A stretch of 64,000 bases of DNA, taken from positions 55,012,545 to 55,076,544 of the forward strand of contig NC_068994.1 in assembly GCF_001194135.2 (NCBI RefSeq). The letters are read 5' to 3'. Each line of letters starts with the position of its first letter. Position 1 is the stretch's first letter. Positions 12,580 through 64,000 of this stretch are shown here, piece by piece. The position numbers and the translations under genes are program-made. Source of the DNA: Octopus bimaculoides (Eukaryota). Under the pieces are notes generated by a model, which saw nothing but the letters and a program-made list of their open reading frames with translations, was not told the origin of the DNA and made no database searches.

Positions 12580-14253
12580 ATGAAGTTTGCTGTTACAAAA
12601 GCTGTTCTTTTCGTTTTTCTGATTCCAATTTTTGCATTGACCGTAACATGTCGTGTGTTGTCTTCCAGGGGACACGATCTTGTTGATTGGGAACATTCAC
12701 GGCTAGGGCCTCAAGATGGCCTCACTGAAGACGCTTATCGTCTTCGTCACCTTCCTTCACAGCCTGATGTCCCCAATGTTCCGTCATCATCTTCTTCTCT
12801 TTCTTCTCCTGTTAATCACCGACGGCGTTATCATCGCCAGAACCTCGATCACCACCAGGTGGAATCCCCGGAGGAGACTGTCAATGGAGAGTACGAAAAC
12901 GTCCAACAATGGGACGAAGAAGATCCGCAGTGTCGTCACAAAGAACAAATCCATGCGCGAAACGGAAAACACGCCCGACAAAGTCACGGGAAATCTATTC
13001 GGCGACGACAGAGGGAACGCCACGAACAGCGATCCGGGGAACGAAACCGGCGTCGACGCATAGAGCGTCTTGGTCAACGACTTAGAGGTCATCAGAGAGA
13101 ATTCTACAGGAAGCCGATGAAAGGGCTCAACCAGCACCAACACCGGCGAGGAAGGTTCGATGAGTATCATGGCTTAGAAATCACTGGACATCGAGAAGGA
13201 GATTTCGACGAGCTGCAACGTCTAGGAGGCTCTCAGCATCAAGAGGAAGATTTTTACGACTTACAGGCCGCCCAACACCAAGAGGGGGATTTTGACGAGC
13301 AGCCAGATTTAAGGGCCACTCAGCACCGAGAAGAAGATTATGATAAGCAGCAACGCTTCGATGCCCCTCGATACAGTGAGGGAGAGTTTTATGACTTAGA
13401 TGCCGCTCAGCATCAAGAAAGAGATTTTGACAAGCAGCAAAACTTAGGGGCTACTCAGCACCAAGACGAAGATTTTGACGAGAAGCAAGACTTAGGGGCT
13501 ACTTATCACCAAGATGGGGATTTTGACGAGCAGCAACACTTAGGGACTACTCAGCACCGAGACGAAGATTTCGACGAGCAGCAAGACTTAGGGGCCACTT
13601 ATCACCAAGATGAGGATTTTGACGAGCAGCAACACTTAAGGGCCACTCAGCACCGAGACGAAGATTTTGACGAGCAGCAAGAATTAGGGACCACTTATCA
13701 CCAAGATGGGGATTTTGACGAGCAGCAACACTTAGGGATCACTCAGCACCGAGACGAAGATTTTGACGAGCAGCAGCCCTTAGGTACGCCTCGATACCAT
13801 AACAGCGAGTTTTATGACTTAGAGGCACCTCACCACCGCGAAGGAGATTATGACGAACAACACAACTTAGGGGTCACTCAGCATCGAGAGGAAGATTTTG
13901 ATGAACAGCGAGACTTAGGGGCCACACAGCACCGATGGAGGGACCATGATGAACAGCAAGATTTATGGGCCACTGAACAAGAAAGAGAATTTCACGAACA
14001 TCCAGAATTAGGAACTGCTCAACACCAACAGGAAGAATTCCACGAAGAATTACTGACACAAGACTATGAGCTGCCAGGAAGGAACGCTAATATGGATGAA
14101 GATGAAAGTCAATATATTAGTGATATCAATAAAGAAGCTATGATGCCTACAGGTGAGGGAGTCCCCAGACTCCACAACCATCACCAACATCGTATTGACT
14201 ATGATAAACATCACCGTGTGACTGAGAGCTTGAATCATGTAAATATTGACTAG
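12580..14253 (+). CDS. Secreted 557-aa protein: signal peptide, Arg-rich block, and acidic His/Gln/Asp/Glu-rich tandem repeats; no recognised family
   Basis: Uninterrupted 1674-nt ORF in otherwise stop-rich DNA. ATG at 12580 in context GAACCATGA; the track start at 12556 is a TTG. The N-terminus MKFAVTKAVLFVFLIPIFALTVTC is signal-peptide-like. Codon-preserving 48-bp repeats; TAG stop at 14251-14253. Confidence 0.85.
   Translation: MKFAVTKAVLFVFLIPIFALTVTCRVLSSRGHDLVDWEHSRLGPQDGLTEDAYRLRHLPSQPDVPNVPSSSSSLSSPVNHRRRYHRQNLDHHQVESPEETVNGEYENVQQWDEEDPQCRHKEQIHARNGKHARQSHGKSIRRRQRERHEQRSGERNRRRRIERLGQRLRGHQREFYRKPMKGLNQHQHRRGRFDEYHGLEITGHREGDFDELQRLGGSQHQEEDFYDLQAAQHQEGDFDEQPDLRATQHREEDYDKQQRFDAPRYSEGEFYDLDAAQHQERDFDKQQNLGATQHQDEDFDEKQDLGATYHQDGDFDEQQHLGTTQHRDEDFDEQQDLGATYHQDEDFDEQQHLRATQHRDEDFDEQQELGTTYHQDGDFDEQQHLGITQHRDEDFDEQQPLGTPRYHNSEFYDLEAPHHREGDYDEQHNLGVTQHREEDFDEQRDLGATQHRWRDHDEQQDLWATEQEREFHEHPELGTAQHQQEEFHEELLTQDYELPGRNANMDEDESQYISDINKEAMMPTGEGVPRLHNHHQHRIDYDKHHRVTESLNHVNID
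13126..14049 (+). repeat. Coding tandem repeat: about 20 units of 48 bp (16 aa, consensus LG(A/T)T(Q/Y)H(Q/R)D(E/G)DFDEQQx) with three 39-bp (13 aa, ...FYD) variants
   Basis: Core units start at 13444, 13492, 13540, 13588, 13636, 13684, 13732 (exact 48-nt spacing). They alternate TQH and TYHQ types, giving a 96-bp higher-order period. Flanking units are degenerate. Confidence 0.95.
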
Positions 14254-14503
14254 CATATACACAAGGTAAGACAGCCCTTATTTTGATCTGTGTGTGCGTG
14301 TGTATGTGTGTGTGTGTAATTTAATTGAGGAAAAGAAGTCAATCGCTATTACGATTTAAAAAAAAAACACATTTTTGTTTGTCTTGTTTACACGCAAAAC
14401 CCTCACAACAACACACACACGCACACACGTTATTTGTTTTGTCCTGTTCTGTCCATAATGGTTTTCTTAATGTAAACCCTTGTGGTTAATAAAGAAATCA
14501 TCA

Positions 14504-14558
<55 letters not shown>

Positions 14559-14596
14559 AGCGAGCTGAATTCTTTATTACAGGCACAAGGCCTATC

Positions 14597-14810
14597 AAGG
14601 CGGCGAGCTGGCAGAATCGTTAGCACGCTGGGCTAAATGCATAGCGGTATTTCGTCTGTCGCTAATGTTTTGAGTTCAAATTCCGCCGAGGTCGACTTTG
14701 CCTTTCATCCTTTCGGGGTCGATAAATTAAGTACCAGTTGCGTACTGAAGTCGATCTAATCGACTAGCCCCTTCCCCCAAAATTTCGGGCCTTGTGCCTA
14801 GAGTAGAAAA
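14597..14810 (+). mobile_element. SINE family 2 (central GCCTTTCATCCTTTCGGGGTCGATAAATTAAGTACCAG, Deu/Nin-domain-like); many copies
   Basis: Related copies at about 29458-29610, 34686-34900, 36320-36465, 40355-40915 (three), 42095-42290, 46930-47265 (two), 51460-51570, 53160-53350, 61485-61700. The Nin/Deu assignment is from memory of the motif. Confidence 0.8.
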
Positions 14811-22524: not shown

Positions 22525-22573
22525 ATGATCCGCAATCTCTTGGTACTTGCTTGTCTCGTCGCTGTGGTCTTTG
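22525..22573 (+). CDS. Signal-peptide exon of the pacifastin-like precursor ([16 protein letters not shown]|)
   Basis: Acceptor TTTTCATCTCAG ends at 22491. An in-frame TAG lies upstream of the ATG at 22525, followed by a hydrophobic core and a phase-1 donor G|GTAAGA at 22573/22574 that matches the phase-1 domain exons. Confidence 0.75.
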
Positions 22574-23367
22574 GTAAGAAACATTTATTATTATTATTAT
22601 TTCGTGTGAATAAGCGTGTATGTATGTATGTATGTATGTATGTATGTATGTATGTATGTATGTATGTATGTATGTATGTATGTATGTATGTATGATTCGA
22701 GCATGTAGATGATTTAGATCTCATATAGAAGCAGTTGTAGAAGCTGAAGGTGACTTTATTGAATAACATTTTAGAAAAGAGGGTTTATTTTTATCCTCAA
22801 CATTTTTTGATTAAGTTTTTATGTTATTATATACCCGTTTTTTTTTTAGAAACATAAATCTGTCCTCAAATATCTTATGCACCCTGTATATATATATATA
22901 AATATATATGTAGTGAAACTACCTTACATATATATATATATGTATGTATATATACACACACATTGAGAAAAATGTATACTAAAAATAAGATAAATATATA
23001 TAGGGAGGGAGAAAAAATGCACATATCGAGTAGAGGTCGGCAATGCCCCTGCAGAGTTTTAGGTCCAATAAGGCTTGCACAACACCTCATAGATCCACTC
23101 CACTTTATTGACATTATCCAGATACAAGCCAGAGCAAGATGTCTGGTGCCAATATGAGTCACATACATACATACATACATACATACATACATACATACAT
23201 ACATACATACATACATACAAACATTTATATATATATACGTGAGTCGTCTAAGAGACCATAAGTCAAGGAAAAAAGTTTATGTATTATCCGAAATGTATAG
23301 TATTAAATACCAATTACGGTTGGTAAGACCAGTCGTGATGGACATTCAATACTATACGTTTCAGATA

Positions 23368-23449
<82 letters not shown>

Positions 23450-23783
23450 GTACTCTGTTTTTAGCGCCATTGCATGGACGTCTGTCGTTGTCTTTTATTG
23501 AATGGGCCAATTTGATATCGTGACATCGTCGTTTCCGTTTGTCATGACATAGCCTCATCTCTCAGCACAGTGGAATATCCGGCAGTTTCTTATGCGCATT
23601 TACATTCACTCCTTCATACTGTCAAGTGTGTTGACCATTTTTTTTTATCGACTGGTTCCTGAACAGTCACGAATCTTCGAGCATCAACCTCTTTCAGTAA
23701 TCGGTCACTGATGCTATTTAATAGAGTCTAGTTCGAGAGACTGTAGTACATTCTGTACTAAATTTTGACTTTAGTCTTACCAA

Positions 23784-23817
<34 letters not shown>

Positions 23818-57704: not shown

Positions 57705-63714
<6,010 letters not shown>

Positions 63715-63774
63715 GTATGTCTATCAAATTTTATTGTTTGTATTTTATTCTTTTTATTTTATTTTTTATGTTGT

Positions 63775-64000
63775 GGTTGGCACTCCGTCGCTTACGACGT
63801 CGAGGGCTCCAGTTGATCCGATCAACGGAACAGCCTGCTCATGAAATTAACGTGCAAGTGGCTGAGCACTCCACAGACACGTGTACCCTTAACGTAGTTC
63901 TCGGGGATATTCAGCGTGACACAGTGTGACAAGGCTGGCCCCTTTGAAATACAGGCACAACAGAAACGGGAAGAAAGAGTGAGAGAAAGTTGTGGTGAAA
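63775..64000 (-). mobile_element. tRNA-derived SINE family 1 copy in the last visible cathepsin intron (truncated by window end)
   Basis: Reverse complement of the 3' part of 8911-9291. Confidence 0.85.

What the first reader, a model, noticed from the sequence alone, without database searches (positions are those of the whole stretch)
12580..14253. Uncharacterised secreted protein with about 20 acidic His-rich repeats
Seen: a signal peptide, then a single large exon with 16-aa units such as LGATYHQDGDFDEQQH and LGTTQHRDEDFDEQQD in an alternating 32-aa higher-order pattern. Three 13-aa ...FYD units punctuate the array; there is only one Cys after the signal peptide. I recognise no known family. 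Inference: an intrinsically disordered, strongly acidic, His/Asp/Glu-dense secreted protein suited to metal or Ca2+ binding, pH-triggered condensation (granin-like granule packaging), or a structural secretion such as mucus, egg coat or adhesive. It may be cephalopod-restricted.
Basis: partly seen in the sequence, partly recalled or inferred. Interest (0 to 1): 0.75.

Follow-up and report, generated by a model that had tools for sequence, protein, structure and literature searches.

The report
Orphan secreted acidic repeat protein, octopus
This is a real, intronless-looking Octopus bimaculoides gene for a secreted, disordered protein made of a short arginine-rich block followed by 19 acidic repeats that each keep one histidine and an Asp-x-Asp core. 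It matches no known protein family, its function is unknown and can only be inferred, and orphan repeat proteins of this sort are fairly common in molluscs.

Summary
Window 12580..14253 (+) is a 557-codon ORF. It has a signal-peptide-like start and a 19-unit repeat array (14 units of 16 aa, 3 of 13 aa ending FYD, 2 of 15 aa; nt 13174-14052). There are 96-nt and 135-nt higher-order repeats and one Cys after the leader.

The same product is a called single-exon gene on Octopus bimaculoides chromosome CM046614.1. Repeat units differ mostly at synonymous sites (pN/pS 0.41 in frame; 1.09 and 0.72 off frame). They keep L1, H6, D10 and D12 invariant, so the peptide has been under selection.

The mature pI is about 5.0. 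Computed net charge goes from about 0 at pH 5 to -63 at pH 8.1.

The array is predicted to be disordered. Pfam, PDB, 1.84 billion representative proteins, a repeat-profile search and the literature all gave no relative. A control shows that octopus proteomes are absent from these databases, so restriction to cephalopods is untested.

[quoted passage not shown] That function is inferred and untested. Interest is moderate to low.

The parts
12392..12448 (+). A/T-rich stretch with TATA-like motifs (TATAATAA, TATTTAAATA), 130-190 nt upstream of the ATG and just after a (CA)n microsatellite at 12324-12369. Candidate core promoter.
   Evidence: Read directly from the sequence. No functional evidence.
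12553..12555 (+). In-frame TGA upstream of the start. It fixes ATG 12580 as the first possible start in this exon.
12580..12651 (+). Signal-peptide-like leader, aa 1-24 (MKFAVTKAVLFVFLIPIFALTVTC). Cleavage is predicted after C24, or a few residues earlier.
   Evidence: Sequence and a rule-based reading (n-, h- and c-regions). The hydrophobic core of about 15 residues is too short for a typical membrane anchor. Not run through SignalP.
12652..12924 (+). Non-repetitive region, aa 25-115. Mixed charge, with a poly-Ser patch (SSSSSLSS) and an RRR site at aa 81-83.
   Evidence: AlphaFold2 pLDDT 39-57.
12925..13173 (+). Arg/His/Gln-rich basic block, aa 116-198. pI 12.4 and net charge about +20 at pH 7.4. 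It contains the only post-leader Cys (C117). It carries the dibasic sites RRR 141-143, RRRR 157-160, RK 177-178 and RR 189-190. AlphaFold2 predicts one long helix at 116-177.
   Evidence: (pLDDT up to 92 for aa 141-170)
13042..13059 (+). RNRRRR, aa 155-160. These are the only two overlapping R-x-[KR]-R (furin-type) matches in the protein.
   Evidence: pattern match only
13174..14052 (+). Acidic repeat array, aa 199-491, 19 units. D+E 30%, Q 15.4%, His 8.9%, net charge -67. Consensus LGATQHRDEDFDEQQx. L1, H6, D10 and D12 are invariant in all 14 full units.
   Evidence: pN/pS between units is 0.41 in frame, against 1.09 and 0.72 in the other frames.
13423..13775 (+). Youngest core of the array: 3.7 copies of a 96-nt (32-aa) higher-order unit at 92% identity. 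It alternates ..TYHQDGDFDEQQH with ..TQHRDEDFDEQQD.
13222..13260 (+). First 13-aa unit, LGGSQHQEEDFYD. Tyr in an acidic context.
13357..13395 (+). Second 13-aa unit, FDAPRYSEGEFYD.
13780..13818 (+). Third 13-aa unit, LGTPRYHNSEFYD.
14053..14253 (+). Non-repetitive His-rich tail, aa 492-557, ending ...HVNID, plus the TAG stop at 14251-14253. No KDEL/HDEL-type motif and no hydrophobic C-terminus.
14150..14158 (+). Strong donor-like site CAG|GTGAGG. The exon would end at 14152, in phase 1. It is one of only two sites matching 8 or more of 9 donor consensus positions in 12580-14300. Its phase fits the downstream pacifastin exons.
   Evidence: Use of this site is unproven.
14263..14271 (+). Second donor-like site AAG|GTAAGA, 12 nt after the stop codon. 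Possible 3'-UTR intron.
14488..14493 (+). AATAAA polyadenylation-signal hexamer, 235 nt after the stop codon.
   Evidence: Read from the sequence.

Best explanation
SHOWN. Window 12580-14253 is a real gene of Octopus bimaculoides with a single coding exon. It encodes a 557-aa soluble secretory-pathway protein built of four parts:
- a leader peptide;
- about 90 aa of mixed sequence;
- an Arg-rich basic block of about 83 aa (about +20) with dibasic and furin-type sites;
- a 293-aa array of 19 acidic repeats (net -67), followed by a short His-rich tail.
Each full repeat keeps one His and a D-x-D core, as H-x-[DE]-x-D-[FY]-D-E-Q-Q. The repeats have been under purifying selection at the protein level. 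The array is predicted to be disordered.

INFERRED (most likely mechanism). The protein is a charge-segregated polyampholyte that acts as a low-affinity, high-capacity binder of divalent cations (Ca2+, and Zn2+ or Cu2+ through the His/Asp sites). It would also serve as a pH-switchable condensing matrix inside secretory compartments.
- At granule pH of about 5-5.5, the roughly 49 His are protonated and net charge falls to about 0 to -13. The basic block can then pair with the acidic array of neighbouring molecules, helped by Ca2+, and the protein condenses.
- At hemolymph or seawater pH of 7.4-8.1, net charge is about -58 to -63, so the material repels itself, hydrates and disperses or releases bound cations.
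- Cleavage at the RNRRRR site could separate the basic block from the acidic block and make dispersal irreversible.

In function this resembles granins and the vertebrate histidine-rich Ca-binding protein (HRC), without being related to either. Tissue, ligand and processing are all untested.
For: Gene reality:
- The exact 557-aa product is a called gene on NCBI GCA_001194135.2, chromosome CM046614.1, at 55,025,124-55,026,797. The gene range equals the CDS.
- It is the longest ORF in the window. An in-frame stop lies 27 nt upstream of the ATG, there is an A at -3, and an AATAAA lies 235 nt after the stop.

Selection on the peptide:
- pN/pS between the 14 full units is 0.41 in the ORF frame, against 1.09 and 0.72 in the other frames. 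It is 0.35 for the older outer units.
- Differences by codon position are 300/302/500.
- Columns L1, H6, D10 and D12 are invariant, and H-x-[DE]-x-D-[FY]-D occurs 14 times.

Charge architecture:
- Mature pI is 4.99. Net charge is -0.3, -13, -38, -58 and -63 at pH 5.0, 5.5, 6.5, 7.4 and 8.1.
- The block at aa 116-198 has pI 12.4. The array has pI 4.15.
- Charge segregation kappa is 0.25, against 0.17 +/- 0.02 in 200 shuffles (maximum 0.22).

Disorder: every segment lies on the disordered side of the charge-hydropathy plot. AlphaFold2 gives no structure for the array, with pLDDT 34-45.

Processing sites: dibasic and furin-type motifs occur only in the N-terminal third.

Precedent: HRC has a signal peptide and tandem His-plus-acidic repeats. 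It binds Ca2+ with low affinity and high capacity without any canonical Ca2+ motif (PMC6171002).
Against: - There is no expression, localisation, binding or condensation data of any kind. The function rests on composition and analogy.
- No orthologue could be examined, so conservation, and even expression as a protein, is unverified.
- pKa-based charge curves ignore local electrostatics. In a polyanion, His pKa values shift upward, which would move the switch toward neutral pH.
- The protein lacks the defining parts of HRC (HRHRGH, poly-Glu, the CxxC cluster) and of chromogranins (the N-terminal disulfide loop).
- The acidic array contains almost no dibasic sites, unlike granins, which are cut into many peptides.
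- The signal peptide was judged by eye and not by a trained predictor.
Confidence: 0.4

Rival explanations
1. Extracellular acidic matrix protein. After secretion it would control CaCO3 or other mineral deposition (statoliths), or build a structural secretion. It would be analogous to acidic repetitive shell-matrix proteins and fish otolith matrix proteins. Alternatively, it could be cross-linked through its conserved Gln-Gln pairs by transglutaminase.
For: It has a signal peptide plus an acidic, repetitive, low-complexity, lineage-specific sequence. That is the typical profile of mollusc biomineral matrix proteins (class described in PMC4897951 and bioRxiv 10.1101/2021.07.10.451900). The D-x-D-x-D/E spacing recurs regularly. 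Q14 and Q15 are conserved in 12 and 11 of 14 units.
Against: O. bimaculoides has no shell, and no proteomic link to statoliths or any other structure was found. Literature searches for the repeat peptides in full text, and in one salivary-gland proteome supplement, found nothing. Lys is nearly absent from the array (3 K), so self-cross-linking by transglutaminase would need a partner. The basic block and the furin-type site are not explained by this reading.
Confidence: 0.2
2. Pro-protein whose active product is the cationic Arg/His-rich N-terminal part. This could be an antimicrobial, polyanion-binding or signalling peptide. The acidic array would act as a charge-neutralising pro-region, removed at the dibasic or furin-type sites. 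Mollusc antimicrobial-peptide precursors also carry an anionic C-terminal extension.
For: All five dibasic sites and both R-x-[KR]-R matches lie in aa 81-190, immediately upstream of the array. The basic block is predicted as a confident helix, with pLDDT up to 92. The arrangement is opposite charge blocks in one precursor.
Against: The acidic part (-67) far exceeds what is needed to neutralise about +20. It is itself under purifying selection with invariant residues, so it is more than a spacer. The basic helix is almost devoid of hydrophobic residues and so is not amphipathic like typical helical antimicrobial peptides (sequence). No amidation-type G-[KR][KR] peptide ends are evident.
Confidence: 0.15
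3. The ORF is the alternative 5' exon of a larger transcript. In this model it splices from the phase-1 donor at 14152|GT into the downstream pacifastin-domain exons. The acidic region would then be an N-terminal pro-domain of a multi-domain protease-inhibitor precursor.
For: CAG|GTGAGG at 14153 is one of only two strong donor-like sites in the gene. It lies just after the array. It is in phase 1, the same phase as all eight pacifastin exons (acceptor ..cag|TG AAA AGA; donor ..G|gtat). Splicing would read ...P-T-V-K-R-S... in frame.
Against: The gene call ends at the TAG at 14251. A separate 419-aa gene is called from window 22525, with its own ATG and signal-peptide exon ([17 protein letters not shown]|gtaaga, phase 1). 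Phase agreement has a 1-in-3 chance. The ORF stays open for 33 codons past the putative donor and is followed by AATAAA.
Confidence: 0.05
4. Not a functional protein. It would be a fortuitous or decaying ORF kept open by expansion of a 48-nt minisatellite, and annotated only by an ab initio gene caller.
For: No homologue exists anywhere in the searchable databases. No transcript evidence is accessible. The origin of the gene call (evidence-based or ab initio) is unknown. Tandem repeats propagate an open frame. Other frames in the N-terminal part are also partly open.
Against: There are 264 non-repeat codons open (P about 9e-7). A signal-peptide-like sequence sits exactly at the first ATG after an in-frame stop. 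There is a frame-specific excess of synonymous differences between units, even among the old, diverged outer units (pS 0.68, pN 0.24). Four columns are invariant.
Confidence: 0.07

Closest known systems
Histidine-rich Ca2+-binding protein (HRC) of vertebrate sarcoplasmic reticulum
   Same: N-terminal signal sequence. A long run of near-identical tandem repeats that each combine His with acidic residues. More than 30% acidic residues in the repeat region and no canonical Ca2+ motif. HRC is a demonstrated low-affinity, high-capacity Ca2+ binder (PMC6171002). The octopus array is 30% D+E and 8.9% His.
   Different: No detectable sequence relationship: there is no Pfam hit above noise, and no hit in 1.84e9 proteins. 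HRC repeats are 29 aa, with an HRHRGH cluster followed by a block of 10-11 acidic residues. Here the units are 16 aa, with one invariant His and interleaved D/E/F/Q. There is no poly-Glu stretch and no C-terminal CxxC cluster (only one Cys). The octopus protein has an Arg-rich basic block that HRC lacks.
Granins (chromogranin A/B, secretogranins)
   Same: Secretory-pathway proteins that are acidic (pI about 5), disordered and carry dibasic sites. From my general knowledge, granins bind Ca2+ weakly and aggregate at low pH and high Ca2+ to drive granule formation.
   Different: No Granin-family match. No N-terminal disulfide loop. Dibasic sites are confined to the N-terminal third. The tandem-repeat architecture is not a granin feature. 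Neuroendocrine expression is untested.
Acidic repetitive biomineral matrix proteins of molluscs (for example Aspein or Pif80 type) and otolith matrix proteins of fish
   Same: Signal peptide, extreme acidity, low-complexity tandem repeats, intrinsic disorder, and lineage restriction with no homologues.
   Different: Those proteins are typically poly-Asp or Ser/Asp-rich and are found in mineral extracts. This one has a fixed 16-aa motif with His, Phe and Gln-Gln. It also has a basic block and no known link to any mineral. The host species is shell-less.
Tetratricopeptide repeats (designed consensus CTPR3Y3, PDB 2wqh)
   Same: Local similarity LG..Y...GD[FY]DE recurs every second unit. PDB phmmer E = 0.003, and Pfam TPR_1 E = 0.16, below its cut-off.
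   Different: The period is 32 and not 34, so the alignment needs a 2-residue gap per repeat. The helix-B half of the TPR and its hydrophobic signature are missing. The protein is secreted and strongly charged, and AlphaFold2 predicts no helices in the array. I treat this as a chance or local-motif resemblance.

Membership tests
HRC (histidine-rich Ca-binding protein) | Detectable sequence or profile similarity to HRC repeats | tested here: not met
   Pfam scan at E<=1 returned only sub-threshold TPR_1 and Glu_dehyd_C. Exhaustive phmmer against 1.84e9 representatives returned only spurious period-16 repeat matches.
HRC (histidine-rich Ca-binding protein) | 29-residue repeats with an HRHRGH cluster plus a block of 10-11 acidic residues, a poly-Glu stretch, and a C-terminal cluster of 14 Cys (CxxC). 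Features as listed in PMC6171002. | tested here: not met
   Units are 16/13/15 aa, with a single invariant His and interleaved acidic residues. The longest pure acidic run is 3-4 residues. There are only two Cys in the whole protein.
HRC (histidine-rich Ca-binding protein) | N-terminal signal sequence and luminal low-affinity, high-capacity Ca2+ binding | tested here: inconclusive
   A signal-peptide-like leader is present. Ca2+ binding cannot be tested with these tools.
Granins | Granin-family sequence signature and the N-terminal disulfide loop (CgA/CgB) | tested here: not met
   No Pfam hit. There is only one Cys after the leader.
Granins | Acidic pI, multiple dibasic processing sites, secretory leader | tested here: met
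   Mature pI is 4.99. There are five dibasic sites and a leader. These features are generic and do not establish membership.
Granins | Sorting to dense-core granules of neuroendocrine cells, with aggregation at low pH and high Ca2+ | not testable with these tools
   No expression or biochemical data were accessible.
TPR repeat proteins | 34-residue helix-turn-helix unit with conserved small and hydrophobic positions in both helices | tested here: not met
   TPR_1 scores 12.3 bits against a cut-off of 27.8. The alignment to CTPR3Y3 covers only the helix-A/turn half and needs gaps. No helices are predicted in the array.
EF-hand / DxDxDG Ca2+-binding loops | 12-residue loop with Gly at position 6 and Glu at position 12, flanked by helices | tested here: not met
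   The unit has D8/E8-x-D10-x-D12 but Glu at the 'Gly' position, and no Glu at position 12. There is no EF-hand Pfam hit.
Mucins / gel-forming secretions | Pro/Thr/Ser-rich O-glycosylated repeats, usually with Cys-rich terminal domains | tested here: not met
   S+T+P is 11.5% overall. The array has 1% Ser and 2% Pro. There are no N-x-S/T sites and only two Cys.
Multi-copy neuropeptide precursors | Repeated peptide units each flanked by dibasic (KR/RR) cleavage sites, often with Gly for amidation | tested here: not met
   No dibasic site lies inside the array (aa 199-491). The Arg at unit position 7 is present in only 8 of 14 units.
Pacifastin-type inhibitor precursor (as N-terminal part of the neighbouring gene) | Same transcript as the Pacifastin_I domain exons | tested here: inconclusive
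   A phase-compatible donor lies at 14152. However, separate gene calls exist, and the pacifastin gene has its own signal-peptide exon at 22525. RNA-seq is needed to settle this.
Transposable element / repeat-derived ORF | Similarity to transposase, RT, integrase or other TE proteins, or multiple genomic copies | tested here: not met
   No Pfam domain. tblastn finds no second copy in the 64-kb window. Genome-wide copy number could not be tested.

The most novel reading that the evidence does not exclude
The 16-residue unit L-x-x-T-x-H-x-[DE]-x-D-[FY]-D-E-Q-Q-x would be a previously undescribed metal-binding repeat. Each unit would offer a His/Asp/Asp site. Fused to an Arg-rich block, it would form a self-complementary, pH-switchable polyampholyte that octopods evolved de novo. 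Its role would be as a granule-condensing or cation-storing scaffold, a functional analogue of granins or HRC with independent origin.
Probability: 0.2. Interest if true: 0.6.

Novelty: new member of a known kind. Interest (0 to 1): 0.33.

Why it matters
If the inferred mechanism holds, this would be an independently evolved invertebrate counterpart of vertebrate luminal polyanions (granins, HRC, calsequestrin-like buffers). It would come with a compact, regular motif that is convenient for biophysics. The block design (+20 then -67, with about 49 titratable His) is a natural model for pH-gated complex coacervation. It could also interest materials scientists already mining cephalopod His-rich proteins.

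For genome annotation, it is a clean example of a lineage-specific gene grown by nested minisatellite expansion (48-, 96- and 135-nt units) under purifying selection.

As it stands, it is one more uncharacterised orphan secreted repeat protein, a class that is common in mollusc genomes.

Tried and rejected
- Homology searches, all negative:
  - Pfam.
  - Word-indexed search of 5.8e9 proteins with the whole protein. The candidate list reached 8000, probably a cap filled by low-complexity words.
  - The same collection with a profile of three-unit repeat blocks: 1108 candidates, none significant.
  - Exhaustive phmmer against 1.84e9 representatives. The 11 hits at E<=1e-3 are all unrelated proteins whose own repeats of about 16 residues align periodically.
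  - PDB sequences.
  - JGI metagenome contigs.
- Control search: the window's cathepsin-L exon finds nothing above 64% identity, and the query is not in the clustered collection. The collections therefore lack octopus proteomes, and I withdraw any inference about taxonomic restriction.
- Exact look-up with the alternative TTG start: not on record.
- Literature: full-text search for four repeat peptides gave 0 papers. The supplements of an O. vulgaris salivary-gland proteome paper gave 0 hits. Keyword searches for octopus acidic, His-rich or orphan secreted proteins found nothing specific.
- TPR reading: rejected (period, missing helix B, no predicted helices).
- EF-hand reading: rejected (loop positions 6 and 12 are wrong).
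- Neuropeptide precursor: rejected (no flanking cleavage sites in the array).
- Mucin or adhesive: rejected on composition.
- A resemblance to the acidic, Tyr-sulfated exosite-binding tails of leech-type anticoagulants was considered. Nine Tyr sit in contexts with 3 or more acidic and at most one basic/His residue within +/-5. I did not pursue it, because there is no biological rationale in an octopus and no way to test it here.
- Bacterial promoter/terminator scan: irrelevant for a eukaryotic locus.
- Fold search: not run, because the model's mean pLDDT of 48.9 would give meaningless matches.
Full report
**1. What is there**

The window is draft eukaryotic DNA: about 36% G+C, many dinucleotide microsatellites and 17 N-gaps. 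An exact-product look-up places the finding on Octopus bimaculoides chromosome CM046614.1 (assembly GCA_001194135.2) at 55,025,124-55,026,797. The fetched locus is identical to the window.

The ORF runs 12556..14253 on the + strand. An in-frame TGA sits at 12553-12555, and the first ATG is at 12580, with A at -3. This gives a 557-aa product ending at TAG 14251-14253.

A TATA-like A/T stretch lies 130-190 nt upstream. An AATAAA lies 235 nt downstream, at 14488-14493. A SINE-like element follows at about 14570-14790.

**2. Check of the observation**

- The N-terminus MKFAVTKAVLFVFLIPIFALTVTC has the n-, h- and c-regions of a signal peptide. I judged this by rule, because no trained predictor was available.
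- The array occupies aa 199-491 (nt 13174-14052) and parses into 19 units. There are 14 of 16 aa, three of 13 aa ending FYD, and two degenerate units of 15 aa.
- Tandem Repeats Finder reports three periods. Period 48 has 8.1 copies at 81% matches.
- Only C24 (at the predicted cleavage site) and C117 are Cys.

This Arg/His/Gln-rich block has pI 12.4 and about +20 net charge. It holds four of the five dibasic sites (the fifth, RRR, lies just upstream at aa 81-83) and the only R-x-[KR]-R matches (RNRRRR, aa 155-160).

**3. Is it a real coding sequence?**

- The 264 non-repeat codons alone have about a 9e-7 chance of being open at the window's stop-triplet frequency. This is somewhat optimistic, because two other frames are partly open in the N-terminal region.
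- More telling is the pattern among the fourteen 16-aa units. Synonymous differences exceed non-synonymous ones only in the annotated frame: pN/pS is 0.41, against 1.09 and 0.72 in the shifted frames. The ratio is 0.35 among the older, diverged outer units and 0.43 in the young core. Differences by codon position are 300/302/500.
- Columns L1, H6, D10 and D12 are invariant. T4, F11, E13, Q14 and Q15 are nearly so. The motif H-x-[DE]-x-D-[FY]-D occurs 14 times.

The array is therefore a selected peptide motif and more than a compositional accident.

**4. Physical character**

- The mature protein has pI 4.99. With standard pKa values, net charge is -0.3 at pH 5.0, -13 at pH 5.5, -38 at pH 6.5, -58 at pH 7.4 and -63 at pH 8.1. 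The swing comes from 49 His.
- The array alone is 30% D+E, 15.4% Gln and 8.9% His, with 21 K+R and a net charge of -67.
- Charges are segregated. Kappa is 0.25, against 0.17 +/- 0.02 in shuffles.
- All segments fall on the disordered side of the charge-hydropathy plot.
- Single-sequence AlphaFold2 gives mean pLDDT 48.9. It finds no secondary structure and pLDDT 34-45 across the array. It predicts one confident long helix at aa 116-177, with pLDDT up to 92.
- There are no N-glycosylation sequons, only two S-x-E sites, no ER-retrieval motif and no C-terminal hydrophobic segment.
- Nine Tyr sit in contexts with three or more acidic and at most one basic/His residue within +/-5, including the three FYD units. 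These could be sulfation sites (inference).

**5. Relatives**

None was found.

- Pfam gives only sub-threshold noise: TPR_1 at E 0.16 and Glu_dehyd_C at E 0.23.
- The word-indexed search of 5.8e9 proteins found nothing with the whole protein. It also found nothing with a profile of three-unit repeat blocks: 1108 candidates, none at E<=0.01.
- The exhaustive phmmer scan of 1.84e9 cluster representatives gave 11 hits at E<=1e-3. On inspection, all are unrelated proteins whose own repeats of about 16 residues align in register.
- PDB sequences give only a designed consensus TPR (2wqh, E 0.003). The match runs through the local string LG..Y...GD[FY]DE, needs a 2-residue gap every 32 aa, and misses the whole helix-B half.
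- JGI metagenome contigs gave nothing. Full-text searches for the repeat peptides gave nothing.

One caveat is important. A control query with the window's own cathepsin-L exon found no hit above 64% identity. The query protein itself is not in the clustered collection. Octopus proteomes are therefore not in these databases. The negative result means only that nothing similar exists among prokaryotes, metagenomes and the eukaryotes that are present.

**6. Neighbourhood and gene boundaries**

tblastn finds no paralogue in the window.

The next gene is called 8.3 kb downstream on the same strand (419-aa product). It starts at window 22525 with its own signal-peptide exon, [17 protein letters not shown]|gtaaga, in phase 1. 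It continues through at least eight exons at about 24.1-33.5 kb. Each exon encodes K-R-S plus one six-Cys Pacifastin_I domain (PF05375, E 3e-14 to 4e-11), and all are phase 1/1. Pacifastin precursors are known components of octopus posterior salivary glands (PMC7693380). A cathepsin-L-like gene occupies 59.5-63.8 kb.

Inside the acidic gene, only two sites match 8 or more of 9 positions of the donor consensus.
- CAG|GTGAGG at 14153 is in phase 1, just after the array.
- AAG|GTAAGA at 14266 is 12 nt past the stop.

The first would splice in frame into the pacifastin exons. The pacifastin gene has its own leader exon, the gene calls are separate, and phase agreement is a 1-in-3 event. I therefore rate a fusion transcript at about 5%, but RNA-seq could settle it quickly.

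**7. Most likely mechanism**

Shown: this is a secretory-type, disordered, charge-segregated polyampholyte with a regularly spaced, selected His/Asp/Asp/Glu motif.

Inferred: it binds divalent cations with low affinity and high capacity. Ca2+ would bind on the carboxylates, and Zn2+ or Cu2+ at the His6/Asp10/Asp12 sites. His6 and Asp10 are i and i+4.

Also inferred: it condenses when His is protonated and Ca2+ is high, as in acidic secretory compartments. There its net charge approaches zero, and the +20 block can pair with the acidic arrays of neighbouring molecules. At pH 7.4-8.1 the net charge of about -60 would drive swelling, dispersal or cation release. Cleavage at RNRRRR would uncouple the two blocks.

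The closest functional precedents are HRC and the granins. HRC has a signal peptide and nine His-plus-acidic 29-aa repeats. It binds Ca2+ with low affinity and high capacity without a canonical motif (PMC6171002). The defining features of both families were tested and not met, so this is an analogy and not membership. I give this mechanism about 0.4.

**8. Rivals**

- An extracellular acidic matrix or structural protein, for example in statoliths, or cross-linked through the conserved Gln-Gln pairs: 0.2.
- A pro-protein whose active part is the cationic N-terminal region, with the array as a neutralising pro-region: 0.15. Against this, the array is oversized and itself under selection, and the basic helix is not amphipathic.
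- A fusion with the pacifastin gene: 0.05.
- A non-functional ORF: about 0.07. Against this are the frame-specific synonymous excess and the leader peptide at the first ATG.
- TPR, EF-hand, mucin, adhesive and neuropeptide-precursor readings were each tested on their defining features and rejected.

**9. Novelty and verdict**

The gene is already called in the public assembly but is, as far as I could find, uncharacterised. It belongs to no family. In kind, it is another lineage-specific, secreted, acidic tandem-repeat protein, a class well known in molluscs.

The neat motif, the opposite-charge block design and the large computed pH-dependent charge swing make it a reasonable candidate for biophysical work. 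Without expression or comparative data, it is of moderate to low interest (0.33).

The most novel reading not excluded is a new metal-binding repeat forming a pH-gated condensate scaffold of independent origin. I give that about 0.2 probability.

Noticed in passing
window 22525-33522 (+): A multi-domain pacifastin-type serine-protease-inhibitor precursor gene (called product 419 aa). It has a 49-nt signal-peptide exon at 22525-22573 ([17 protein letters not shown]|gtaaga). At least eight phase-1/1 exons follow, each encoding a K-R-S dibasic site plus one six-Cys Pacifastin_I domain (PF05375, E 3e-14 to 4e-11). The Cys1-to-Cys6 cores lie at 24191-24298, 25119-25226, 25759-25866, 27355-27462, 29024-29131, 29753-29860, 32484-32591 and 33331-33438. 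Pacifastins are already reported from octopus posterior salivary glands (PMC7693380).
   Followed up: partly
window 59537-63841 (+): Exons of a cathepsin-L-like papain-family cysteine protease (Peptidase_C1: E 8e-23 for 63410-63841, E 2e-10 for 61950-62312). The gene runs off the 3' end of the window.
   Followed up: partly
window 14150-14158 and the pacifastin exon acceptors (for example about 24170): The strong donor-like site CAG|GTGAGG near the end of the acidic ORF is in phase 1, the same phase as every pacifastin exon. An in-frame fusion transcript is therefore formally possible (it would read ...PTVKRS...). Only RNA-seq junction reads can decide.
   Followed up: partly
window 3304-3421 (-): 5S rRNA match (RF00001, 42.2 bits against a gathering score of 38, full length 1-120), next to a 533-nt N-gap. 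It could be a 5S gene, a pseudogene or a 5S-derived element.
   Followed up: no
window about 14570-14790 (+) and about 61487 (+): SINE-like element immediately downstream of the gene's AATAAA. A 26-mer from it recurs with 3 mismatches at 61487-61512, inside the cathepsin gene region. ARAGORN calls no tRNA in the window.
   Followed up: partly
window 30032-30376 (+): ORF fragment that looks to me like a Tc1/mariner-type DDE transposase remnant (…[46 protein letters not shown]…). It lies between pacifastin exons and has no Pfam hit at E<=0.1.
   Followed up: partly
window 14506-14557: A perfect (ATT)17 microsatellite directly after the polyadenylation hexamer. (CA)n/(GT)n tracts flank the gene at 12324-12369 and 14290-14320. 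They are potential sources of length polymorphism near the UTRs.
   Followed up: no
protein databases used (not a window feature): The large protein collections contain neither this gene's product nor any close match to the window's cathepsin-L (best 64% identity). Octopus proteomes seem to be missing, so negative homology results for cephalopod genes from these tools need that caveat.
   Followed up: yes
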